Assembly: GCF_031769215.1 (NCBI RefSeq)
Contig: NW_026782140.1
Span: 1,488,001 to 1,552,000 of the forward strand
Origin: Ylistrum balloti
Lineage: Eukaryota
Length of the DNA: 64,000 nucleotides
Direction: 5' to 3'
Part shown: in pieces, positions 2,288 through 56,258 of the stretch
How positions within the stretch are numbered: position 1 is the stretch's first letter
Layout: the number at the start of each line of letters is the position of its first letter
Made by a program: the position numbers and the translations under genes
The notes under the pieces: model-generated
Database searches by the model: none
Seen by the model: only the letters and a program-made list of their open reading frames with translations
What the model was told of the DNA's origin: nothing

Positions 2288-3673
2288 TACTCAACAAAAA
2301 AAAGAAATGCACAAAGTCCCCCCTGCAGTACACCTTAGCTGTTAAGAAATAATGGAATCTACCCTAAAATCAGCCAAGGGTGATAATGTCATTGTCTGAT
2401 TTTGTAAGCTTCTTTAGTCCAAATCATGTGGCGTGATCAAGGCAAGCCAGATTTTTTCAAACAAATAATTACAACAGATACTCGAAGTTCAGCCACATTA
2501 ATTCTCCACGTTGAAATTTTGATTTTGCCTTTGACCGAAATGCAACTCTTAATGCAAATTCAGAGAGGTGGAGCAATTGCCATGTTGATGGATGGTCATA
2601 GCCAAACTGCTGTCACATGACATGTCCCAGGATCGGCGGTTTGCATGTAAAGACCGCACAACAAGACAGGGCGATTCGATTGTCGCACTTGCACAACAGA
2701 TTCAAGACTGCTGTAGAGACTGCTTCGCATGCCTTAGGTACTTATGGCAAACCCATTAGTGCTCAAACTGCCAGGAACCGCTTGCGTGCCGAGAGAATCA
2801 TGGCATGCTGACCTTATGTCGGGCCACATCTGACACCACTGAAGTAGCAAGTATTTCTCTTGACTGGATGTACAGACATGGTCTAAATGGGTTTGGGATG
2901 CGTCGTAGAAAGCATGTGATGTACACAAACGAGTCTAGATTCTGTCTGTATCGCTCAGACGGAAGAAAAAGAGTATATCGTAGACAAGGTGAGTGTTTGC
3001 CAATGCATGCATGGTTGAAAGCAATAGATTTGGTGGGGCTTCTGTAATGGCTTGGGTTTGGGGAGGCATCTTCCATGGAGTAAAATCCCCATACATGGTC
3101 CTGGATCCAAACCTCAATGCCATTCGATACAGAGACCAGATCCTTCAACCATATGTCCTTCTACTTCTCAGACGTTATAGCCTAATTTTCCAGCAAGACA
3201 ATGCTTGATCATATGTTGCCAGAGTCTGTCTTGATTTTCTCACAGCAAACAATGTTCAGCCTCTGGAATGGCCCTCATATAGCTCTGTCATGTCTCCCAT
3301 TGAACATCTGTGGGATGAGCTTGACAGGCGTATTAGGAAACGTCAAAATCCCCCAACTAACTGCGCCCAGTTGATCGCAGCATTAACACAAGAATGGAAC
3401 AACATTCCCTTAAGGCAAATTATTGTTCTCATGAATTCAATGAGTAGGAGAATCCATGCCCACACCAGGTACTGAAGTGTCGTTTTGTTTTTCACAGGTA
3501 TCCCACTTTGAGTACCTACTGACGACACGAGTGACTTCACACAGACATTTCCTTTACATTATTGTAAAGAGGAGACTTGTCCCTTCACATCAATATAAAG
3601 TTTTGTATAAATTTCCCAAAATACCATAGGCCATTTTTATAATTTAACTGTGTGTTTCTTTTTTAGTTGAGTA
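2288..3673 (+). mobile_element. Tc1-family (DD34E) DNA transposon, decayed
   Basis: Imperfect TIRs: TACTCAACAAAAAAAAGAAATGCACA at 2288 versus tgtgtgtttcttttttagttgagta ending at 3673, with TA at the termini. Transposase fragments occur in several frames (YTNESRF, FGGASVMAW, FQQDNA, SPIEHLWDELDRR), with 34 residues between the second D and the E. It has stops and frameshifts, and the first catalytic D is mutated to N. Confidence 0.9.
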
Positions 3674-7599: not shown

Positions 7600-9422
7600 T
7601 TATCTCTCTAATTCCATTTCAAAGATTTGCCCCCATCCCTCCACATCCATGGTACACATGATCTGTTTAGGCAGTTGTTGGTAGGAAGTGAAGTTGCTAT
7701 GACAGCCTCTTAACCACTGTCGCCTTGTACCCTGACTGCCATGGTTCATCATATATACTTCCTGAAACAAGTCAGATTGATGGGAGAGAATTACTGACAG
7801 AGTTACTGGAATTCCAAACCATAGCATGAAATGTTTCTTCATTTTAGATTAAAATAATCTTATGTCAAGAACCAAGATATGATATAAGACAATAGACCAT
7901 AGAGACAAGGCACATTGTAAGATTGTAGAAACAAGACACGTTGTCAGATGGTAGAGACAGACACGTAAGTTGGGAGAGACAGGCATATTGTAAGATGGTA
8001 GAGTCAGACACATGGTAAGATGGTAGAGACAGACACATTGTAAGATGGTAGAGACAGGCATATTGTAAGATGGTAGAGACAGGCATATTGTAAGATGGTA
8101 GAAACAAGACATATTGTAAGATGGTAGAGACAAGACACATTGTAAGATGGTAGAGACAAGACACATTGTAAGATGGTAGAGACAAGACATATTGTAAGAT
8201 GGTAGAGACAAGACACATTGTAAGATGGTAGAGACAGACACATTGTAAGATGGTAGAGACAGGCATATTGTAAGATGGTAGAGTCAGACACATTGTAAGA
8301 TGGTAGAGACAGACACATTGTAAGATGGTACAGTCAGACACATTGTAAGATGGTAGAGTCAGACACATTGTAAGTTGGGAGAGACAGGCATATTGTAAGA
8401 TGGTAGAGTCAGACACATGGTAAGATGGTAGAGACAGACACATTGTATGATGGTAGAGACAGGCATATTGTAAGATAGTAGAGTCAGACACATTGTAAGA
8501 TGGTAGAGACAGGCATATTGTAAGATGGTAGAGACAGACACATTGCAATATGGTAGAGACAGACACATTTTAAGATGGTAGAGACAGGCATATTGTAAGA
8601 TAGTAGAGTCAGACACATTGTAAGATGGTAGAGACAGGCATATTGTAAGATGGTAGAGACAGGCACATTGTAAGATAGTAGAGTCAGACACATTGTAAGA
8701 TGGTAGAGACAGGCATATTGTAAGATGGTAGAGACAGGCACATTGTAAGATAGTAGAGACAGGATTGTAAGATGGTAGAGACAGACACATTGTAAGTTGG
8801 GAGAGACAGGCATATTGTAAGATGGTAGAGACAGACACATTGTAAGATGGTAGAGACAGGCATATTGTAAGATGGTAGAGACAGACACATTGTAAGATGG
8901 TAGAGACAGGCATATTGTAAGATGGTAGAGACAGACACATTGTAAGATCATTGTAAAATGTAAGAGAAAAATACACAGTGCAAGTTGGCAGAGACAAGAT
9001 AACAATGGAAGATTGTTGTGACAACACATAACATCAGATGGTAAAGACAACACAATATGTAAGAGGTAGAGACAACACAAAATACAAGATGGTAAAGACA
9101 CACAAGACACTAAGTAACATGGTTTGTTTACAATAACAGTTTAAAACAGAACAGCTGTTGATACTATTACAAATGGTCTGAAAGCTAACTGAAATGTGAA
9201 TACACCTGTAATGTGTAGTCTTACCTTCCAAGAGTACCCAAGTGCCCGGTCATTCTGAATGAGATCCGACTTCATTTCAAGTGTGCCACACAGTCTCCTC
9301 CAAAGAGGCTCAGATGTGCTGATAGAACTCCAGTACTTACACACGGCACCTGCATTGCACAGATCAACTGCATTCAGGTACTGAAAGATCTGTATCAGGA
9401 GCTCGGGAGGTAGGTCTCTCAT
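7600..9422 (-). CDS. FBXO48: F-box only protein 48 (119 aa if the Met at 9422 is the start)
   Basis: Exon 9422-9225 encodes MRDLPPELLIQIFQYLNAVDLCNAGAVCKYW...DRALGYSWK (F-box), with donor GTAAG at 9224. Exon 7761-7600 encodes EVYMMNHGSQGTRRQWLRGCHSNFTSYQQLPKQIMCTMDVEGWGQIFEMELER plus stop. The GYSW...W..G..SN....LP..IM..MD...WG.I.E.ELER pattern matches my recollection of vertebrate FBXO48. An acceptor at 9431-9432 and a strong upstream donor at 9863 suggest a 5' UTR exon. Confidence 0.9.
7900..8945. repeat. 25-bp minisatellite filling the FBXO48 intron, about 40 copies
   Basis: Unit tgtaagatggtagagacag(a/g)ca(c/t)at. It explains the overlapping pseudo-ORFs at 7849-9110. Confidence 0.95.
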
Positions 9423-9949
9423 TCTGTAACCTAAAATATAATTGCAATAACGACACAATGCCAGGCTCATAACATTCAACACTCCCGCATACGTGTACTA
9501 TTGTAAAAATATATATGTATATATGAGACGATAAATGGTAAACATGCCCTTAACAATTTTTTAACAGACACTATATTTGATATGTGTTTAATCGGTCCAA
9601 GCAGGAAAAAGATACCTCGATTTTCATCTGAAACCTACACCAGACATCTGTCCGTCGAAATGTCAACGTCTTGCTCATAAATGCATGTACCTGAACAGGA
9701 AAACGTGTCCGGTGTTTGTTATCAAAAATTGTTCTGACTACGGCGAATACGAAAGTTCTTGTATATTTGTTCTTGATGTAACAAGTGTTTTATTTATAAC
9801 GCACACCATAAGGTTTTCCCGTTAACTGTCAAAATGGGGGCGTGGCAGCTTTTGTGTACTTACCTTACTTGCTATGATGTTTTGATGGAGTTATGGTAAT
9901 ATTGCATCTAAAAGATGGTTCAAATCAGTTAATATAATCCTATGGCTCA

Positions 9950-13311: not shown

Positions 13312-13630
13312 TTATATGTCATATATACCAGATGTTATGTATGTCATATATACCAGGTGTTATGTATGTCATATATACCAGATGTTATGTATGTCATATA
13401 TACCAGGTGTTATGTATGTCATATATACCAGATGTTATGTATGTCATATATACCAGGTGTTATGTATGTCATATATACCAGATGTTATGTGTCATATATA
13501 CAAGGTGTTATGTATGTCATATATACCAGATGTTATGTATGTCATATATATCAGGTGTTATGTATGTCATATGTACCAGGTGTTATGTATGACATGTCAT
13601 ATATACCAGGTGTTATATATGTCATGTTAA
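13312..13630. repeat. 25-bp minisatellite downstream of PIGF
   Basis: Unit atgtcatatatacca(g/a)(a/g)tgttatgt, about 12 copies. Confidence 0.9.
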
Positions 13631-40764: not shown

Positions 40765-43700
40765 CTGACCACTATGATGGACAGACTTACTACAGACATA
40801 ATGACCAGTATATATATATATATAAAATACTGACCACTATGATGGACAGACTTACTACAGACATAATAACCAGTATATATATATATATAAAATACTGACC
40901 ACTATGATGGACAGACTTACTACAGACATAATAACCAGTATATATATATATAAAATACTGACCACTATGATGGACAGACTTACTACAGACATAATCACCA
41001 GTATATATATATATACAATACTGACCACTATGATGGACAGACTTACTACAGACATAATAACCAGTATATATATATATAAAATACTGACCACTATGATGGA
41101 CAGACTTACTACAGACATAATCACCAGTATATATATATATACAATACTGACCACTATGATGGACAGACTTTCTTCAGACATAATAACCAAGTCTGTTTCA
41201 GAACTGAAGTTTTTATCTTGAAGAAGATCAATGACAGATAAATTTGGTTTAATTTAGATAGACGTACTAATTTTCTTATATTTACTGTAATATGTACCAA
41301 AATTTTGTGTGTAATGAGATGTATGTTTGAAGGAATACGCTGCCAATGACCTAGAGAGGAACATGCTGGAGGAATACATTGAGAGTTTCACCTCGGGATC
41401 TATACCCTCACACAAAAACGGGTCGAGACATTGGATCAAAAACACAGGTCCTATTGTGGAAACGTAAGTATTATATAACTTTGACAGTAGATATGTACAT
41501 CAGATCACAAATCATTTTCTAATGTTGGGTTCTGGATTACATTTAGCAAGCTTGTCACATGATGTTCAGTGAAGCCAACCAGAAGGAAATCCTACATCAA
41601 ATTGCCCATTCCTGTTAACAGGGCAGTATAAACACAGCAAAGCAATCTTTTTCGACTAGATTATAATTGACCTTTACTTATAATGGCCCTAAATGCTATT
41701 TTTTATTCGTAGTTTGAACGATATTAAAGATATATATTTTGTAGAACAATCCTTTTTATACACCCGTCGGGACATGTTATATTTTCACGTGGGCGGGCAG
41801 GCCGCTGCACATAGGTTTCCATTTAATAACTTGAAGAATTTTTTACAGATTAATTTCAAACTTCGTATGAAGATTTATTACCATAAAAGCCAGATCAAGT
41901 TCGATAACCAACATTTTTCGCCCATTATTTACAGAGTTATGGCTCTTCGTACATTTGCAAAATAGGTTTCCGATCGATAACTTGTCAAATTTTTTACAGT
42001 TTAATTGGAAACTTCACATAAAGGTTTATTACCATAAAAGCCAGAGCCAGGTCAAGATCAATAACCAAAATTTTTCGCCCATTATTTACAGAGTTATGGC
42101 CCTTGGTACATTTGCAAAATAGGTTTCCCCTCAATAACTTGAGTAATTTTTCATTTATTAATTTGAAACTTCATATGAAGGTTTATTACAAAAATAGTTT
42201 TTGACAGGCGTATATTGTTCCGCCCTGCAGTACTCTTGTTTTTTGTGCATTTTTGTTTCAGTATTTTCATTCCTTCATGTTCACAGGTACATTGGCTTCA
42301 TTGAATCATACAGAGACCCATTTGGAATGAGGGGCGAGTTTGAGGGTAGGTCAAATGATATTCAAATGGAGGAGAGAGGTTGAGGGTAGAAAACTGATAT
42401 TCAAATTGAGGAGAGAGTTTGAGGGTAGAAAATAGGTATTTAAATTGAGGCAGGGGAGTTTGAAGTAGGTCAATTGATATTCACAATGAAGGCAGTGTTT
42501 GAGGGTAGGTCAGTGGATATTCAAAATGAGGGGAGCATTGGAGGGTAGGTCAGTGAATATTCAAAAGGAAGGGAGTGTTTGAGGGTAGGTCAGTGGATAT
42601 TCAAAAGGAAGGGAGTGTTTGAGGGTAGGTCAGTGGATCTTCACAATGAGGGGAGTGTTTAAGGGTAGGTCAGTGGATCTTCACAATGAGAGGAGTGTTT
42701 GAGAGTAGGTCAGTGAATATTCAAAAGGAAGGGAGTGTTTGAGGGTAGGTCCGTGAATATTCAAAAGGAAGGGAGTGTTTGAGGGTAGGTCAGTAAATAT
42801 TCAAAAGGAAGTGAGTGTTTGAGGGTAGGTCAGTGAATATTCAAAAGGAAGGGAGTGTTTGAGGGTAGGTCAGTGGATATTCAAAAGGAAGGGAGTGTTT
42901 GAGGGTAGGTCCGTGAATATTCAAAAGGAAGGGAGTGTTTGAGGGTAGGTCAGTGAATATTCAAAAGGAAGGGAGTGTTTGAGGGTAGGTCAGTAAATAT
43001 GCACAATGAGTTGAGTGTTTGAGGGTAGGTCAGTGGATCTTCACAATGAGGGGAGTGTTTGAGGGTAGGTCAGTAGATCTTCACAATGAGGGGAGTGTTT
43101 GAGGGTAGGTCAGTAGATCTTCACAATGAAGGAAGTGTTTGAGGGTAGGTCAGTAGATCTTCACAATGAGGGGAGTGTTTGAGGGTAGGTCAGTAGATCT
43201 TCACAATGAGGGGAGTGTTTGAGGGTAGGTCAGTAGATCTTCACAATGAGGGGAGTGTTTGAGGGTAGGTCAGTTGATCTTCACAATGAGGGGAGTGTTT
43301 GAGGGTAGGTCAGTAGATCTTCACAATGAGGGGAGTGTTTGAGGGTATGTCAGTAGATCTTCACAATGAAGGAAGTGTTTGAGGGTAGGTCAGTAGATCT
43401 TCACAATGAGGGGAGTGTTTGAGGGTAGGTCAGTAGATCTTCACAATGAGGGGAGTGTTTGAGGGTAGGTCAGTAGATCTTCACAATGAAGGAAGTGTTT
43501 GAGGGTAGGTCAGTAGATCTTCACAATGAGGGGAGTGTTTGAGGGTAGGTCAGTGGATCTTCACAATGAGGGGAGTGTTTGAGGGTAGGTCAGTAGATCT
43601 TCACAATGAAGGAAGTGTTTGAGGGTAGGTCAGTGGATCTTCAAATCAAGAGTAGTGTTTTAAGGTAGGTATTTTGATATTCCAACCATGTGTACCTCTA

Positions 43701-46700
43701 CCAGATGTTTATTTGATCATTTTATTTACTGATGACAAGCTAAAGAATGGGTATAGCTAGTTTCAGTGAAACAGACAACTATAAAAACTGGATATGCCAC
43801 CTGGAATTACATCAGAAGTTTTTGTCACTATTGGTGTTGTAGATGAAATTATTTATCGTGTCAGGTTTTGTGGCCGTAGTTAATAAAGAGATGAGTGCCA
43901 AGTTCACCAATCTTGTCACCAACGCAGAGAAGTTTCTACCACTGTTGCCATGGCCAGCATCATTTGAGAAGGACAAATTCTTACGACCTGACTTCACCTC
44001 TCTTGACGTCCTTGCATTTGGAGGATCTGGCATTCCAGCAGGAATCAACATTCCAAACTGTAAGTCAGACTCATGTCTTAAAAGAATCCTGACTTTATCT
44101 GAAAAAAATTAACTGATGTACTCTATAGCATGCTATTGTCATGGGGATGATAATTTTGCTAGTCCGTGGTACAGGAAAATGATTATGAAAAATTAAGTCT
44201 GGAAATAATGAGACACATGGGTATAAGGAAATAGAGACACATGGGTATAAGGAAATAATGAGATACATGGGTATAAGGAAATAATGAGACACATGGGTAT
44301 AAGGAAATATTGAGACACTTGGGTATAAGGAAATATTGAGACACTTGGGTATAAGGAAATATTGAGACACTTGGGTATAAGGAAATATTGAGACACTTGG
44401 ATATAAGGAAATATTGAGACATGTAAGGATAAGGAAATAATGAGACACATGGGTATAAGGAAATATTGAGACACATGGGTATAAGGAAATATTGAGACAC
44501 TTGGATATAAGAAAATATTGAGACATGTAAGGATAAGAAAATAATGAAACACATGAGTATAAAGAAATAATGAGACACATGGGTATAAGGTGTCCTTTTA
44601 CATGAAGATCATGAAATTTCAATCCATTGAAATATAATTTTGATTGTTTTAAAAGAAATCTGCAGAACTTTTCATTTGTAGGTTTTGTTTTAGGGAAACA
44701 GCATGTCCTAGATATTTATACGTGCTGAGTGGTTGTTTGTACAGCTATATTATAGGTATATACATATATATTACATGCATACATGCTGACCTCTAGTTAT
44801 GGCTTGTTTTATGGATTTTTCTCTATACAACATGAAATCAGACGATGACATCCGCCAATCAGAGGGATTTAAGAATGTGTCTCTGGGAAATGTCATAGTA
44901 TCTGCCTACAAGGACACCATGGACAAGATCAGCTTTCTGGCTGAGGAGGACAAGGTCAGTTTATTTAGGATCAGAGTTCGTCAATATATCCATACCCAAT
45001 GATAAAGTTTGTGAATCTAGTTTTCAGGATCACAGTGTGTATATTTTGTATCATTAATAGTTTGTGATGAAGAAATTATCAATTATGTGAAAATATGCAT
45101 TTTTACCATTTTTTAAAAAAGTAACTGACTTTTTGCTTGCAGGAATTATTTGTTAATCTGAAGACAACTACATTTGAAGTCCAAGTGGGTTTACACGAAC
45201 TACTCGGCCATGGTAGTGGAAAGTTGTTTGTCAAGGTGGGTGTTTTTTGTAGTACTCTTGTTACAATCACTGTTAATGTTGAATACACAAAGGCCTCTCA
45301 TAGTTCTCCTGACAAGTTCTATTGAATACAATTAATTTTGGATATACCATGGGGTGGTGGACAGCTGTCTGAGTCAAGATGAATCAAGTTTTTCCATATA
45401 AGTGACTAATAACTAATATCTGAATATTCATTTACACAGGATAAAGAAGGAAATCTCAACTTTGATGTGGCATCAGTGACTGACCCAGAAACAAATAAAA
45501 AGGTGGGTAACACACTGCATGATATTATACTACCACTGTTGTATTTGTAGGATATGTCTAACAGTACCTGTTAATGAGGGAAAGTAACATTGTTACCAGT
45601 ATTACATTTGTAGGATATGTCTAACAGTACCTGTTTATGAGGGAAAGTAACATTGTTACCAGTATTACATTTGTAGGATATGTCTAACAGTACCTGTTTA
45701 TGAGGGAAAGTAACATTGTTACCAGTATTACATTTGTAGGATATGTCTAACGGTGCCTGTTTATGAGGGAAAGTAACATTGTTACCAGTGTTACATTTGT
45801 AGGATATGTCTAACAGTACCTGTTTATGAGGGAAAGTAACATTGTTACCAGTATTACATTTGTAGGATATGTCTAACAGTACCTGTTTATGAGGGAAAGT
45901 AACATTGTTACCAGTGTTACATTTGTAGGATATGTCTAACAGTACCTGTTTATGAGGGAAAGTAACATTGTTACCAGTATTACATTTGTAGGATATGTCT
46001 AACAGTACCTGTTTATGAGGGAAAGTAACATTGTTACCAGTGTTACATTTGTAGGATATGTCTAAAAGTACCTGTTTATGAGGGAAAGTAACATTGTTAC
46101 CAGTATTACATTTGTAGGATATGTCTAACGGTACCTGTTAATGAGGGAAAGTAACATTGTTACCAGTATTACATTTGTAGGATATGTCTAACAGTACCTG
46201 TTTATGAGGGAAAGTAACATTGTTACCAGTGTTACATTTGTAGGATATGTCTAACAGTACCTGTTTATGAGGGAAAGTAACATTGTTACCAGTATTACAT
46301 TTGTAGGATATGTCTAACAGTACCTGTTTATGAGGGAAAGTAACATTGTTACCAGTATTACATTTTCAGGATATGTCTAACAGTACCTGTTTATGAGGGA
46401 AAGTAACATTGTTACCAGTATTACATTTGTAGGATATGTCTAAAAGTACCTGTTTATGAGGGAAAGTAACATTGTTACCAGTGTTACATTTGTAGGATAT
46501 GTCTAAAAGTACCTGTTTATGAGGGAAAGTAACATTGTTACCAGTGTTACATTTGTAGGATATGTCTAACAGTACCTGTTTATGAGGGAAAGTAACATTG
46601 TTACCAGTATTACATTTGTAGAATATATATAATACTACCTGTTTAAGAGAGGCAGTAACACTTGTTACAGATAGAAAAGTAGTTTTGATAAGGAACATGG

Positions 46701-49700
46701 ACAAATAAATAATGTTTACATCCAAACTTGATTTTTTCAGGTAGAGAAGTGGTATGAACACAATGAGTCGTGGGATGGCAAATTTACCACCATAGCTTCC
46801 AGTTACGAAGAATGTCGTGCTGAATGTGTTGGAATCTACCTTTGTCTTTCTGCAGAGGTCCTAAGGTATCAGTAGACAACTGAAGTACAGTCAAACTTTT
46901 ATGAATCGAACTTCGATGTTTTGAATTTCTCAATGTATCAAAGTTTTTGTGTGTTCCCGATATTTAAACCTACATATTACTACTAACTTACCCCTCTATG
47001 AATTGAGTTTTATAAATAGAACTTTACAATGTATGGAAGTTTTTGCAGGGACCATTAGCTATGATAACAATGTAACTGACACCTCATGAATTGAGTTTTA
47101 TAAATAGAACTTTACAATGTATGGAAGTTTTTGCAGGGACCATAAGCTATGATAACAATGTAACTGACACCTCATGAATTGAGTTTTATAAATAGAACTT
47201 TACAATGTATGGAAGTTTTTGCAGGGACCATAAGCTATGATAACAATGTAACTGACACCTCATGAATTGAACAAAATATTTACCTGTATGGATTCTTTCA
47301 ACCCACAGCAAAATTTCAGATATTGTTATCTTACAATGAAATTACAATAGCACGCTATTATCAGCTCTGTGTTACGAGGTAAATTAATGCCTGGACAAAG
47401 ATTAAGATTTAGTTGCTTACTTACATGCCATGATATTTAATCGATGGTAATCGTATGATGTTTATGCTGCCATTGTATTGATGGCATGCAGTTAGGTCTA
47501 ATTTATGGAATTGTGAAAACAACAGGAGGAAATCCTATTACTTGTATGATGATTTCACTAAGTCTCGAAGCGTCTAGAGGTTCTGTAGATATACAGTGTT
47601 TCTGAAGGCTTGGAGATAGGCAGTGTTTCATTTAAACCTCAGTAAATCTCACCTTTTTCTTTGTTGTCAGAATCTTTGGCCATACTGATGATGCTGCTGA
47701 TGATGTAATATACATCAACTGGCTGAATATGGTCCGTGCTGGTCTGCTGGCTCTCGAGTTCTACTCTCCAGAAACAGGTGCTTGGAGACAAGTTAGTACT
47801 TTCTTACACAATAAGTACTTTTGACATTCCTAGTTCTCAAGGAACTTACTTACCAGCAACAAAACACATTACATTTCAAAATGTCATGTGTTAGATGACA
47901 AATTAGAAATTTGTGATTCAGAGAGTGTGACTTTATTACTGTATTTTGTAGAACCACAGCAGGCCTGATTTGTGATCCTGAGAGTGTGACTCTATTACCT
48001 GTATTTTGTAGAACCACAGCAGGCCTGATTTGTGATCCTGAGAGTGTGACTTTATTACCTGTATTTTGTAGAACCACAGCAGGCCTGATTTGTGATCCTG
48101 GGAGTGTGACTCCATTACTGTATTTTGTAGAACCACAGCAGGCCTGATTTGTGATCCTGAGAGTGTGACTTTATTACTGTATTTTGTAGAACCACAGCAG
48201 GCCTGATTTGTGATCCAGAGAGTTTGACTCTATTACAGTATTTTGTAGAACCACAGCAGGCCTGATTTGTGATCCTGAGAGTGTGACATTATTACTGTAT
48301 TTTGTAGAACCACAGCAGGCCTGATTTGTGATCCTGAGAGTGTGACTCTATTACAGTATTTTGTAGAACCACAGCAGGCCTGATTTGTGATCCTGAGAGT
48401 GTGACTCTATTACCTGTATTTTGTAGAACCACAGCAGGCCTGATTTGTGATCCTGAGAGTGTGACTCTATTACCTGTATTTTGTAGAACCACAGCAGGCC
48501 TGATTTGTGATCCTGAGAGTGTGACTTTATTACCTGTATTTTGTAGAACCACAGCAGGCCTGATTTGTGATCCTGAGAGTGTGACTCTATTACTGTATTT
48601 TGTAGAACCACAGCAGGCCTGATTTGTGATCCTGAGAGTGTGACTCTATTACTGTATTTTGTAGAACCACAGCAGGCCTGATTTGTGATCCTGAGAGTGT
48701 GACTGAGAGTGTGACTCTATTACTGTATTTTGTAGAACCACAGCAGGCCTGATTTGTGATCCTGAGAGTGTGACTCTATTACTGTATTTTGTAGAACCAC
48801 AGCAGGCCTGATTTGTGATCCTGAGAGTGTGACTCTATTACCTGTATTTTGTAGAACCACAGCAGGCCTGATTTGTGCTCCTGAGAGTTTGACTCTATTA
48901 CCTGTATTTTGTAGAACCACAGCAGGCCTGATTTGTGCTCCTGAGAGTTTGAATCTATTACCTGTATTTTGTAGAACCACAGCAGGCCTGATTTGTGCTC
49001 CTGAGAGTTTGAATATATTACCTGTATTTTGTAGAACCACAGCAGGCCTGATTTGTGATCCTGAGAGTGTGACTCTATTACCTGTATTTTGTAGAACCAC
49101 AGCAGGCCTGATTTGTGCTCCTGAGAGTTTGAATCTATTACCTGTATTTTGTAGAACCACAGCAGGCCTGATTTGTGATTTTGAGCCAACAGTATAGTTG
49201 TAACACAATGTTATTGAATTTAACATGTTGATGTTTTGTTAACTTTATTTCTATAACATCATTTTTGTTTTTATCATTTGATAATTGTTTCCACTACTAC
49301 TACTACTGCTATTATTTAGAGGGCTTTAATACCCATTTATGTATTTTAGGCTCACATGCAGGCCCGATTTGTGATCCTAAGGGTGTTGCTGGAGGCTGGT
49401 AAGGGACTGGTCACAATAAAATACTTCACTGCTGCTGATGGAAGCGAGGACATGTTGCTCAAGTTGGATCGCAGTAAGATCATCTCTGTTGGCAAACCAG
49501 CTATTGGTGACTTCCTCAGGAAGCTTCAGGTAGGTTTTTCATGTTGACTATAAAATTTGTTAGCAAAGGTAGAATCCCCTGTACTGGTATTTCAAAGAAA
49601 AATGAGATACAATGTATATTTCATTATAATTTTTATGGAACAGACTTTAACTTTTCTGCATTTCATCTTTTCTTGTAAAGGAATTTTTCATTGTATACTA

Positions 49701-51231
49701 ATTAAGTCTTAATGCAAGATGTCAATTAAATGGTTAGTATACAACACTGACCTCAATGTATAAACCAGGTTTACAAGTCCAGTAGTGACCTCGATGTGTA
49801 AACCAGGTTTACATGTCCAGTAGTGACCTTGATGTGTAAACCAGGTTTACAAGTCCAGTAGTGACCTCGATGTGTAAACCAGGTTTACATGTCCAGTAGT
49901 GACCTCGATGTGTAAACCAGGTTTACATGTCCAGTAGTGACCTTGATGTGTAAACCAGGTTTACATGTCCAGTAGTGACCTCGATGTGTAAACCAGGTTT
50001 ACATGTCCAGTAGTGACCTTGATGTGTAAACCAGGTTTACATGTCCAGTAGTGACCTTGATGTATAAACCAGGTTTACATGTCCAGTAGTGACCTTGATG
50101 TGTAAACCAGGTTTACATGTCCAGTAGTGACCTAGATGTATAAACCAGGTTTACATGTCCAGTAGTGACCTCGATGTGTAAACCAGGTTTACATGTCCAG
50201 TAGTGACCTTGATGTGTAAACCAGGTTTACATGTCCAGTAGTGACCTCGATGTATAAACCAGGTTTACATGTCCAGTAGTGACCTCGATGTGTAAACCAG
50301 GTTTACATGTCCAGTAGTGACCTCGATGTATAAAACAGGTTTACATGTCCATTAGTGACCTCGATGTATAAACCAGGTTTACATGTCCAGTAGTGACCTC
50401 GATGTATAAACCAGGTTTACATGTCCAGTAGTGACCTTGATGTGTAAACCAGGTTTACATGTCCAGTAGTGACCTTGATGTATAAACCAGGTTTACATGT
50501 CCAGTAGTGACCTTGATGTGTAAACCAGGTTTACATGTCCAGTAGTGACCTTGATGTATAAACCAGGTTTACATGTCCAGTAGTGACCTCGATGTGTAAA
50601 CCAGGTTTACATGTCCAGTGGTGACCTCGATGTGTAAACCAGTTTTACATGTCCAGTAGTGACCTTGATGATATCATAGTAACAAAGTTAATAAGTCTAA
50701 TAGCAACCTTTATGATATTGTTTTAACCAGGTGTACAAGTCCACAGGTGATGTTGAGGCAGGAAAGGCCTTGTATTTATACTACTCAGATGTACATGATC
50801 GCGAGGAACCCCACTTTTTGACGAGACGTGCCACTGTCCTTGCCAGGAAACAGCCAAGGAAAATGTTTGTCCAGCACAACACTGTCGTCAATGGTATGTA
50901 AATGCACATGTGAATTTTAACCAAAATTTTCTATTTATGTGAAAAAATTGGAGAAATTATATTTTTTCCACCAAATTCGAAATTGACATGATTTGTATCG
51001 GTGACGGATATTATATCAAATGTAGGCAATATCATAAATTTGAAACATGATAATATTCAGCTAGAAGTGCCAAATTTGTGTTTTTTTTCTTTTTCAGGCA
51101 GCACAGTAGATCTGAAGAGTTATGACTCAAATGTGACTGGTCTCATCCAATCCTTCGCTGATCGTTTCCCTTCCACTGATGTTGATACCATTATACAGGG
51201 GCTGTGGGAGAAAGACAAACCATACTTCTAA
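31766..51231 (+). CDS. DPP3: Dipeptidyl peptidase 3 (M49 zinc peptidase), 731 aa, 18 coding exons
   Basis: Exons: 31766-31921, 33008-33127, 34219-34308, 36133-36270, 37940-38014, 38507-38597, 40274-40422, 41333-41463, 42287-42345, 43865-44059, 44842-44954, 45143-45235, 45440-45502, 46741-46865, 47671-47791, 49350-49529, 50731-50893 and 51098-51231. All junctions are GT-AG and the total is 2196 nt in frame. Motifs include [46 protein letters not shown] (45194-45211), EECRAE and AHMQARF. Confidence 0.97.
31960..32885. repeat. 60-bp minisatellite in DPP3 coding intron 1, about 15 copies
   Basis: Unit gtaagttatagatgtaggtgaaccatggttcaggtcagtcatcagtaaattatgatactg. Confidence 0.95.
33815..34205. 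repeat. Minisatellite of about 32-39 bp abutting the acceptor of DPP3 coding exon 3
   Basis: Unit aaatgaaggaatttgtaactacctgtacc(taatg)tata, about 11 copies. Confidence 0.9.
34325..35860. repeat. 28-bp minisatellite just after the donor of DPP3 coding exon 3, about 55 copies
   Basis: Unit tataact(a/g)catatcaatacacatgtgta. Confidence 0.95.
36900..37855. repeat. Minisatellite of about 41-47 bp with a variable (TA)n tract
   Basis: Unit atgtacagtgtagtgtatccatggtagaaacctata(ta)n. Confidence 0.9.
40575..41190. repeat. About 61-bp minisatellite with an embedded (TA)n tract
   Basis: Unit (ta)n-aaatactgaccactatgatggacagacttactacagacataat(c/a)accag, about 10 copies. Confidence 0.9.
41745..42245 (+). 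mobile_element. Non-autonomous Helentron/HINE-like element in DPP3 coding intron 8
   Basis: It starts tttttatacacccg, has a ggcgggcaggc microsatellite-like tract, carries a duplicated internal block (ataggtttcc...ataaccaa...tttttcgcccattatttacagagttatggc) and ends gtactcttgtttttt. Confidence 0.55.
42346..43670. repeat. 40-bp minisatellite starting at the donor of DPP3 coding exon 9, about 33 copies
   Basis: Unit gagggtaggtcagt(a/g)gatcttcacaatgaggggagtgttt. Confidence 0.95.
44200..44590. repeat. 26-bp minisatellite, about 14 copies
   Basis: Unit gagacac(a/t)tgggtataaggaaata(a/t)t. Confidence 0.9.
45540..46625. repeat. 63-bp minisatellite, about 17 copies
   Basis: Unit gatatgtctaacagtacctgtttatgagggaaagtaacattgttaccagtattacatttgtag. 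Confidence 0.95.
46999..47272. repeat. 88-bp tandem repeat, 3 copies
   Basis: tgaattgagttttataaatagaactttacaatg...gacacctca, period checked at 46999/47087. Confidence 0.9.
47905..49185. repeat. About 60-bp minisatellite upstream of DPP3 coding exon 16, about 21 copies
   Basis: Unit tattacctgtattttgtagaaccacagcaggcctgatttgtgatcctgagagtgtgactc. Confidence 0.95.
49755..50670. repeat. 38-bp minisatellite upstream of DPP3 coding exon 17, about 24 copies
   Basis: Unit gt(g/a)taaaccaggtttaca(t/a)gtccagtagtgacct(t/c)gat. Confidence 0.95.
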
Positions 51232-54925: not shown

Positions 54926-56258
54926 TACTGAACCCCATAGAAAGTACATTTTCACGTCAAAACTTTTTAATGTGACCTTTTGTATACTACTGTCAATATC
55001 AATAATATAAGTTGTGAGTGAAAATGGTTGAATGACATGCTTTTTGGTCACTTCCGACATTGTTCACACCGACACATGCGCAATGCGTAAAATCGTTTAT
55101 TCTGCACGTACATACACGGGTTTTGCCAATACGTATGAATTTCCACCGATACATATCCTTTATAAAGTGGTCCGTCCCAAAAACATTCATTCGGTGAGGG
55201 TAGCGTGAATAATGCTCATGAAACGCGATGCCACGAGTAACACAATTGCAGAGAGGAATGACTCTTGGAAGTTTGCAGGCGGGTACTTCCGCCACTATTG
55301 TAGCCAGGCGCTTGGTATGTCATGTTAGCACTATCACAGTCTTGCTGAACGCTTTCAACATACGGACTCTGTTTCTGATCGATCCCGGAAGGGAAAACCA
55401 AGGATTAACAACCTCAGGCCCAAGATTGCTACACCCGGATAACTCGCCTTCTTATCTAGACCAATCTTGTTGATTGGCGACGAGTTCTCTTCTCAGACGA
55501 GTCTCGATACCATCTTTCCCATGTTGATGGCCTGGTGCGTGTGTGGTGTCGACGTAACGAACGTCGCTGTGTCCTGCATGCTAACAGGTGGGGTGGCGGC
55601 AGCGTGATGGTGTGGGGAACCTTTAGTTTCCACCATCTGACACCCCTTCACGTCTTCCGTAATCGTGTAACAGGAGTGGTACACAGGAATGGCGTTCTTA
55701 GGCCTTACGTCGTTCTCTGGTTTGTTGCACAGCCTTAACAGCAGTTTTACCTGCAAGACAACGCCCGTTCCCACACGGCTCGAGTACCTATGGGTTTCCT
55801 TACACAGAATAAAGTGAATGTCCTGCCTTGGTCGTCTCTTTCACCAGATAAGGCACCGATAGAACATGTGTGGGATGAAATTGGGAGAAGAATCGCTGGT
55901 GGTCGAATCTGTTGACGTTCACACAGCTGGAACAGAGACTCCTCAAGGAATAGAACAATTTGCTCCAGGCATTCTTCCAGCCTCTCGGCAATTCCATAAG
56001 ACGACATTACACAGCCTTTACCAATGCCCAAGGCGGACAGGCGCATTATTGACTGATTTGTGATTTTCCTTTCACGGAGATACCTTCATTAAATAAACAA
56101 TAGAAATTGTAAAGTTTATGAAGTGAAATCTAGCCACATTTTGTTTAATTGCAATTTTAACAAACTATTGAATAACTCAGTAAAAATTCAATTCCTTTTT
56201 AAATTTCTTATCAAAACGTATCTTTATTCGGACATGCGTTTCTTTTGGGGCTCTGTCT
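54926..56258 (+). mobile_element. Second decayed Tc1-family (DD34E) transposon
   Basis: Fragments are MPRVTQLQRGMTLGSLQAG (HTH), VLFSDESR, WGGGSVMVWG, QDNARSHTAR and APIEHVWDEIGRR, with 34 residues between D and E. Degenerate TIRs are tactgaaccccatagaaag and tttcttttggggctctgt. The coding region is frameshifted. Confidence 0.88.

What the first reader, a model, noticed from the sequence alone, without database searches (positions are those of the whole stretch)
49755..50765. 38-bp array copies the exon 17 acceptor junction (AACCAG|GT.TACAAGTCCA)
Seen: true aaccag|gtgtacaagtcca versus unit aaccag|gtttacaagtcca, 18/19 identical and 26/32 when extended to ttga. The exon-like caag variant survives only in the copies farthest from the exon (about 49770 and 49850), while the rest read catg. 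The array ends about 60 bp before the true AG. Each unit has a CAG|GT proto-splice site usable as donor or acceptor, the substrate for intron gain by tandem duplication or for recursive splicing (inference).
Basis: partly seen in the sequence, partly recalled or inferred. Interest (0 to 1): 0.7.

Follow-up and report, generated by a model that had tools for sequence, protein, structure and literature searches.

The report
Intron repeat copied from splice junction
An intron of a DPP3 peptidase gene holds 24 tandem non-coding copies of its own 3' splice junction; this "mirage" repeat type is known from lancelets and human F7, so it is real but largely ordinary.

Summary
TRF finds 24.3 copies of a 38-bp unit at 49748-50670. 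The 19-mer across the true acceptor (50725-50743) matches all 24 units at 1-3 mismatches, against 0 expected. It is 18/19 in units 1 and 3 only.

The exon start is ancestral: KSTGDV is shared with human DPP3 and the intron position is shared by three relatives. So the array is the copy. The true junction is the array's last member: 24 units of 38 nt, then a decayed 44-nt copy, then the 44-nt source. The unit occurs nowhere else in the genome and is missing from three relatives' introns. One relative carries an independent 116-bp duplication of the same junction.

This is a "mirage" minisatellite. Two more sit in this gene. Random seeding in short introns predicts 1.7 of 7 arrays; 3 are seen (P = 0.23).

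Recursive splicing and intron gain are not supported. The donor-like site is poor, the intron is 1.2 kb and old, and use of a unit's AG stops translation after 10 codons. No RNA check was possible.

One twist is new: every core change from source to unit builds a hairpin centred on the copied AG|G.

Earlier notes of this scan report such repeats elsewhere in this genome.

The parts
49350..49529 (+).
   Evidence: Pfam PF03571 positions 416-474, E 1.3e-15; donor listed
49530..50730 (+). Intron of 1201 nt; 923 nt of it is the array, which leaves about 278 nt of unique intron
   Evidence: Exon ends; array; arithmetic
49748..50670 (+). 38-bp minisatellite: 24 whole units plus an 11-nt partial unit, 95% alike. 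Each unit holds about 18 nt of intron-derived sequence, the AG, and about 20 nt of exon-derived sequence. No open frame is longer than 20 codons.
49793..49817 (+). Example of the unit hairpin (unit 2): an 11-bp stem with the copied CAG in its 3-nt loop. Its core is a perfect 8+8 palindrome around the A of the AG.
50663..50706 (+). Decayed 44-nt copy between the array and the source, in register with both. It shares a GATAT stretch with the source that the 38-nt unit lacks. It holds CTAAT at 50697-50701, a candidate branch point 30 nt before the true AG (inferred).
   Evidence: Alignments; the branch point is read from the sequence
50707..50750 (+). The source, which is also the last member of the array: 24 nt of intron with the true AG at 50729-50730, plus the first 20 nt of the exon
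   Evidence: 30 of 38 unit positions identical with two 3-nt gaps; it is the best match of the unit anywhere in the unmasked window
50731..50893 (+). It starts VYKSTGDV and ends in phase 1 with a GTATGT donor.
   Evidence: Pfam positions 475-524; human DPP3 structures align at residues 628-677; conserved in 14 exon-sized relatives

Best explanation
The array is a "mirage"-type intronic minisatellite. A stretch of about 44 nt across the 3' splice site of a DPP3 exon (24 nt of intron plus 20 nt of exon) was duplicated in tandem, upstream into the intron. The copy next to the exon stayed the working junction.

The history has two stages. First came a few 44-nt copies, of which one decayed relic survives beside the source. 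Then one copy lost 6 nt, gained a hairpin-forming palindrome centred on the copied AG|G, and was amplified to 24 near-identical 38-nt units. I infer that amplification ran by replication slippage or unequal exchange, which hairpins favour.

The interior was homogenised while both edges kept the old state. The array is non-coding and made the intron about four times longer. I infer that the copied AGs stay silent. The only consensus branch point motif I found by eye (CTAAT, 30 nt upstream) and the T-run lie just before the true AG, and in the copies the AG sits in a hairpin loop.

Shown: origin, direction of copying, register, uniqueness in the genome, absence from three relatives. Inferred: the amplification mechanism and the silence of the pseudo-sites.
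For: - Similarity beyond chance: 25 matches against 0 expected. The unit's best match anywhere in the unmasked window is its own 3' flank through the junction, score 20-21 against a shuffled maximum of 17.
- Direction of copying: KSTGDV aligns to human DPP3. The exon start and the preceding CAG are shared by relatives.
- Two stages: the relic and the source are both 44 nt and share a stretch that the 38-nt unit lacks.
- Edges against interior: the ancestral A of caag is in the source, the relic and units 1 and 3 only.
- Not a dispersed repeat: the whole-genome search finds only this locus plus one 72% hit to an unrelated 36-bp array. The 15-mer core occurs here and twice on contig C230.
- Lineage-specific: there is no such array in L014 or L017, and L016 carries a different duplication.
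- Palindrome: the source pairs 5 of 8 arm positions and the consensus unit 8 of 8. All three core substitutions create pairs, P about 4e-4. The unit hairpin has RNA energy -10.2 kcal/mol and z -2.4, while the true junction has z +1.2.
- Non-coding: there are stops in all frames, and an in-phase reading stops after 10 codons.
- The repeat kind is described in PMC3087553 and PMC1557585.
Against: - No RNA or population data were available. Silence of the copied sites, length variation between individuals and correctness of the assembly are therefore all untested.
- The palindrome statistic was noticed after the fact. Ten of 24 units carry a variant that breaks one or more pairs of the 8-bp arms. 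The other two mirages of this gene have no hairpin.
- The direction of the two intronic core changes rests on short outgroup alignments.
- The pyrimidine tract differs only modestly: 65% at the true site against 45-50% in the units.
- Each unit also has a TGAC about 18 nt before its AG, which could serve as a weak branch point.
Confidence: 0.85

Rival explanations
1. The copied CAG|GT sites are used by the spliceosome, either as recursive (ratchet) sites or as cryptic acceptors that give unproductive transcripts, so the array tunes DPP3 output.
For: 23 of 24 units keep CAGGT. Each unit has a TGAC about 18 nt before its AG (sequence). The pseudo-sites of the human F7 repeat are functional when tested (PMC1557585).
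Against: The donor-like site GTTTAC lacks the +5 G and +6 T seen in 9 of 10 donors of this gene. The pyrimidine tract is 45-50%. The intron is only 1.2 kb. The AG lies in a hairpin loop. Use in phase gives a stop after 10 codons. The array is absent from three relatives, so there is no conserved role.
Confidence: 0.07
2. The reverse direction: a pre-existing minisatellite supplied the acceptor and first codons of the exon (exonisation of a repeat unit).
For: The true junction is in register as the last unit of the array.
Against: The first codons (VYKSTGDV) are conserved to human DPP3 and in 14 relatives. The intron position is shared by relatives that have no array.
Confidence: 0.01
3. The resemblance is chance, or only the splice consensus, between an unrelated or transposon-derived satellite and the junction.
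For: The window holds about 37 different arrays, so some chance resemblances could be expected. A 36-bp array on contig C481 shares a 13-mer with the unit.
Against: No match is expected by chance for the 19-mer at up to 3 mismatches. Identity covers 30 of 38 unit positions, and a decayed copy in register lies between array and source. The unit is unique to this locus.
Confidence: 0.02
4. The palindromic units were kept because they act at the DNA or RNA level, as a cluster of dimeric protein-binding sites (intronic enhancer or silencer) or as a long double-stranded RNA.
For: There is a perfect 8+8 palindrome in 14 of 24 units. Three units fold at -44 kcal/mol, z -6.6.
Against: There is no conservation: the array is absent from relatives. 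Ten of 24 units break the palindrome. Any tandem palindrome gives such fold scores. No binding or expression data exist.
Confidence: 0.05

Closest known systems
Amphioxus "mirages" (Adh3, Canestro et al. 2002, PMID 12087171, cited through PMC3087553; globin genes BflGb6 and BflGb9, PMC3087553)
   Same: These are intronic minisatellite-like tandem duplications whose unit spans an intron-exon boundary. BflGb6 copies the 3' end of an intron plus the 5' part of the next exon, as here. Many units keep AG/GT. Cluster edges escape homogenisation. Adh3 units are 10-72 bp.
   Different: The host is said by earlier scan notes to be a scallop, not a cephalochordate; I could not verify this. This case shows a two-stage history (44 nt, then 38 nt) and a derived hairpin centred on the copied AG. 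Normal splicing and length instability, shown for amphioxus, are untested here.
Human F7 intron 7 37-bp VNTR (PMC1557585)
   Same: It is a minisatellite of nearly the same unit length whose first element spans an exon-intron boundary, so the true splice site is accompanied by a row of identical pseudo-sites that normally stay silent.
   Different: F7 copies the donor side, and the true site is the first unit, chosen by 5'-to-3' scanning. Here the acceptor side is copied and the true site is the last unit. I infer that the choice is set by the position of the branch point.
Recursive splice (ratchet) sites
   Same: An AG is followed directly by GT inside an intron.
   Different: Ratchet sites pair a strong pyrimidine tract and AG with a strong GTAAGT-type donor, and they lie in very long introns (from established knowledge). 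Here the donor part is GTTTAC, the tract is weak and the intron is 1.2 kb.
Intron gain by tandem duplication of an AGGT-containing exon segment (Rogers model, as discussed in PMC3087553)
   Same: A tandem duplication multiplies an AG|GT site.
   Different: The duplicated segment already contained an intron boundary, and the intron is shared with relatives. An old intron grew and no new intron arose.

Membership tests
Mirage minisatellite (as described in PMC3087553) | Minisatellite-like head-to-tail repeat inside a gene's intron | tested here: met
   38 bp x 24.3 copies, 95% matches, between two Pfam-supported DPP3 exons
Mirage minisatellite (as described in PMC3087553) | The unit spans an intron-exon boundary, with an intronic part and an exonic part, and adjoins the authentic boundary | tested here: met
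   The unit matches 50707-50750 at 30 of 38 positions: about 18 nt of intron, the AG, and 20 nt of exon. A decayed copy in register links the array to the source.
Mirage minisatellite (as described in PMC3087553) | The exon is the original and the repeat is the copy | tested here: met
   The exon start is conserved to human DPP3 and in relatives that lack the array
Mirage minisatellite (as described in PMC3087553) | Many units keep the AG/GT splice signals | tested here: met
   CAGGT in 23 of 24 units
Mirage minisatellite (as described in PMC3087553) | Concerted evolution inside the cluster, with the boundary units left out | tested here: met
   The interior units are 95% alike. The ancestral A survives only in units 1 and 3, the relic and the source. 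The relic is about 65% like the unit.
Mirage minisatellite (as described in PMC3087553) | Regular splicing is not disturbed | not testable with these tools
Mirage minisatellite (as described in PMC3087553) | Length instability between alleles or individuals | not testable with these tools
   No reads were available. The Pfam search found the DPP3 gene on one contig only, so there is no second haplotype.
Recursive splice site | Strong 3' splice site joined to a strong 5' splice site (pyrimidine tract, AG, then a GTAAGT-like donor) | tested here: not met
   The unit reads GTTTAC after the AG. Nine of 10 donors of this gene have +5 G and +6 T. The tract is 45-50% pyrimidine.
Recursive splice site | Lies in a very long intron | tested here: not met
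   The intron is 1201 nt, about 280 nt without the array
Intron gain by tandem duplication | The intron is new, that is, absent at that position in relatives | tested here: not met
   The same position and phase, with CAG before the V/T-Y-K codons, is seen in L014, L016 and L017
Peptidase M49 / DPP3 (host gene) | Match to the family profile above the curated cut-off, with contiguous exons | tested here: met
   Nine exon hits on one strand, in order along profile positions 116-527. Single exons score up to 110 bits. The PDB hits are DPP3.

The most novel reading that the evidence does not exclude
The hairpin is not an accident. Junction-copying repeats on the acceptor side may survive and expand only after the copied AG|GT is buried in a stem-loop. 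That would make this array a natural example of RNA or DNA structure both silencing a row of pseudo-splice sites and driving repeat expansion. A variant of this reading is that a low level of pseudo-site use gives NMD-targeted transcripts that tune DPP3 output.
Probability: 0.1. Interest if true: 0.55.

Novelty: new member of a known kind. Interest (0 to 1): 0.3.

Why it matters
The array is a clean, datable example of how a splice junction can seed a minisatellite and quadruple the length of an intron without touching the protein.

If earlier scan notes are right that the genome is a scallop, the "mirage" repeat type reaches beyond lancelets and a few human genes into molluscs.

Two points are worth keeping:
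- The same junction was duplicated independently in a related species.
- The unit that amplified is the one that had become a hairpin around the copied AG.

Both points can be tested with ordinary RNA-seq and long-read population data. They bear on how cells ignore rows of near-perfect decoy splice sites.

The local null model shows that no special junction-seeking mechanism is needed. Short introns plus a high birth rate of repeats are enough.

Tried and rejected
- Canestro et al. 2002 (PMC117041) is not held in the library. It is cited only through PMC3087553.
I redid it by running TRF on the window inside the sandbox. One search failed on a mistyped reference and was corrected.
- The 88-bp array at 46984-47270 resembles the donor of the preceding exon only weakly (69/103 with many gaps; score 24.5 against a shuffled maximum of 22). 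I do not count it as a mirage.
- A shared ACCWGGT core as a general minisatellite motif: it is present in only 2 of 37 arrays, so it is not general.
- A hairpin as a general property of arrays or of mirages: only 2 of 18 arrays have one, and the other two mirages of this gene do not.
- Dispersed or transposon origin was rejected.
- Organism identity could not be verified with these tools. The scallop name comes from earlier scan notes. Papers only confirm that such an assembly exists.
Exons were searched one by one by reference.
- The exon number 17 was not checked upstream of 41333.

Full report
**What is there.** TRF reports a 38-bp repeat at 49748-50670 with 24.3 copies and 95% matches. Cut in register, it is 24 whole units (49748-50659) plus an 11-nt partial unit.

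The array lies in an intron of a dipeptidyl-peptidase-3 gene on the + strand:
- A six-frame search of the window's own genome with Pfam PF03571 (Peptidase_M49) gives nine exon-sized hits on one contig, in order along the profile, positions 116 to 527.
- Exon 49350-49529 covers profile positions 416-474. Exon 50731-50892 covers 475-524 from its first residue. The acceptor AG at 50729-50730 is therefore correctly placed.
- Solved human DPP3 structures align to this exon at residues 628-677.

I searched exons one at a time by reference. I made no joined spliced model, and the exon number 17 was not verified upstream of 41333.

**Check of the observation.** The 19-mer across the true junction (50725-50743) matches all 24 units at 1-3 mismatches and nothing else in the window. 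None of 100 dinucleotide shuffles gave a match. Identity is 18/19 in units 1 and 3 only (49763 and 49839), and these are the two caag copies. The array ends 59 nt before the true AG. The best real 32-mer identity is 25/32, not 26/32, because the two favourable variants never share a copy. CAGGT is kept in 23 of 24 units.

**Which is the copy.** The exon begins [14 protein letters not shown] is identical in human DPP3. Fourteen exon-sized relatives from other assemblies share the exon start, and those that read through the acceptor show the preceding CAG. Three of them were fetched with their flanks. All three have the intron at the same position and phase. So the exon start is ancestral and the array is derived from it.

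**Anatomy.**
- Among all unmasked sequence of the window, the unit's best match is its own 3' flank, 50681-50750. The score is 20-21 against a maximum of 17 for shuffled units.
- In register, the 24 units are followed by a decayed 44-nt copy (50663-50706) and then by the source (50707-50750). The source is 24 nt of intron and 20 nt of exon.
- The consensus unit matches the source at 30 of its 38 positions, with two 3-nt gaps.
- The relic and the source are both 44 nt. They share a GATAT stretch that the 38-nt unit lacks.

This points to two stages: an early duplication with a 44-nt period, then amplification of a 38-nt derivative.

The exon-like A of caag is present in the source, the relic and units 1 and 3. 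The 22 other units have T. That is the usual picture of a homogenised interior with old edges, not a polarity gradient.

**Locus-specific and lineage-specific.** Four units searched against the whole 648.5-Mb genome hit only this locus, plus one 72% match to an unrelated 36-bp array on contig C481. The 15-mer core occurs only here and twice on contig C230.

The orthologous introns of L014 and L017 have no such array. L016, the closest relative found (78% amino-acid identity in this exon), has a 116-bp tandem duplication at L016:4882-5092. It comprises 24 nt of intron plus 92 nt of exon of the same junction. Its two copies share states specific to L016, so it arose independently.

[quoted passage not shown] 2002). 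The human F7 intron-7 37-bp VNTR is the donor-side analogue (PMC1557585).

The same gene holds two more clear cases:
- The 60-bp array at 47909-49179 copies the acceptor and the first 37 nt of the preceding exon (40/49).
- The 40-bp array at 42458-43670 copies a donor (89/120 over three decayed flank copies).

A simple null places a seed of each array's period at random in the pre-expansion intron and its edges. It predicts 1.7 junction-spanning arrays among the seven arrays in the nine mapped introns downstream of the exon starting at 41333. Three are seen, P(3 or more) = 0.23. No junction-seeking mechanism is needed. Introns of about 200-600 nt and a very high birth rate of repeats are enough; about 37 arrays lie in these 64 kb.

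- Intron gain is not supported. The intron is old, and the repeat only lengthened it from about 280 to 1201 nt.
- Recursive splicing is not supported by the sequence. After the AG the unit reads GTTTAC, whereas 9 of 10 donors of this gene have +5 G and +6 T. The tract before the unit's AG is 45-50% pyrimidine against 65% at the true site. The intron is short.
- An AG of any unit used in phase reads ten codons and then a stop. No frame stays open for more than 20 codons.
- The only consensus branch point motif I found by eye (CTAAT, 50697-50701) lies in the relic copy, 30 nt before the true AG. The only AG in between is 2-3 nt after it, too close to be used. By the established branch-point scanning model this would pick the true AG. 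This step is inferred.

**A twist.** The consensus unit has a perfect 8+8 palindrome around the A of the copied AG, present in 14 of 24 units. The source pairs only 5 of 8 positions. All three substitutions that separate source and unit in this 17-mer create a Watson-Crick pair. For three random substitutions this has probability about 4e-4.

The interior T at unit position 29 and the 6-nt loss extend the stem to 11 bp, with CAG as the loop. The unit folds at -10.2 kcal/mol as RNA (z -2.4). The true junction is less structured than its shuffles (z +1.2). Outgroup acceptors are pyrimidine-rich at the two intronic positions, which suggests that those changes happened in the unit lineage.

Cautions on this point:
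- The pattern was noticed after the fact.
- Ten of 24 units carry a variant that breaks one or more pairs of the 8-bp arms.
- Only 2 of 18 arrays in the window have such a hairpin, and the other two mirages of this gene do not.

My reading, at about 40% confidence, is that the copy which became a hairpin was the one prone to slippage and so the one that expanded. Structural hiding of the decoy sites is a possible side effect.

**Organism and earlier notes.** Earlier notes of this scan call the genome a scallop (Ylistrum balloti) and report junction-derived minisatellites in several other windows, judged known and ordinary. I reached the mirage reading before seeing them. I tested the two neighbouring arrays and the seeding null myself. 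I could not verify the species name.

**Verdict.** The splicing and intron-gain inferences are not supported. This is a new member of a known kind, with a modestly interesting hairpin and an independent duplication of the same junction in a relative.

Noticed in passing
window 47909-49179 and 49340-49386: The 60-bp array in the previous intron copies the acceptor plus the first 37 nt of the next DPP3 exon (40/49; score 28 against a shuffled maximum of 16.5). About 160 nt of unique spacer separate it from the exon.
   Followed up: partly
window 42338-43670: The 40-bp array copies the last 8 nt of a DPP3 exon plus its GTAGGT donor. The first 16 nt at the true donor equal the consensus unit, and three decayed copies (89/120) link it to the array.
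   Followed up: partly
L016:4854-5095: A related species has an independent two-copy 116-bp tandem duplication of the same exon-17 acceptor junction (24 nt of intron plus 92 nt of exon, copies 86% alike). Use of the upstream AG would shift the frame.
   Followed up: yes
window 41464-51097: Seven of ten mapped DPP3 introns hold a different minisatellite. The three introns without one are only 188-205 nt. About 35% of the window (22.6 kb of 64 kb) is tandem repeat.
   Followed up: partly
window 13315-13625: The 25-bp array has a unit that also contains ACCAGGT, and it has the strongest single-unit hairpin in the window (z -3.4). No flank resemblance was found and its host gene is unknown.
   Followed up: no
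G000:C481:326276-327500 (L013:976-2201): A 36-bp array of at least 34 copies shares a 13-mer (GTGTAAACCAGGT, on its minus strand) with the 38-bp unit. It is otherwise unrelated, and the array runs off the fetched stretch.
   Followed up: partly
window 9144-9497 (-): An open frame with an F-box-like domain (PF12937, E 1.5e-18) lies on the opposite strand, upstream of the DPP3 region.
   Followed up: partly
window 2760-3472 and 55460-55912 (+): Broken open frames give weak DDE_3 transposase matches below the curated cut-off. They are probably decayed Tc1/mariner-type elements.
   Followed up: partly
window 45440-45502: A 63-nt DPP3 exon ([10 protein letters not shown]...) was missed by the Pfam six-frame search. 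I placed it by eye between profile positions 311 and 324. The 63-bp array starts 40 nt after its donor.
   Followed up: partly
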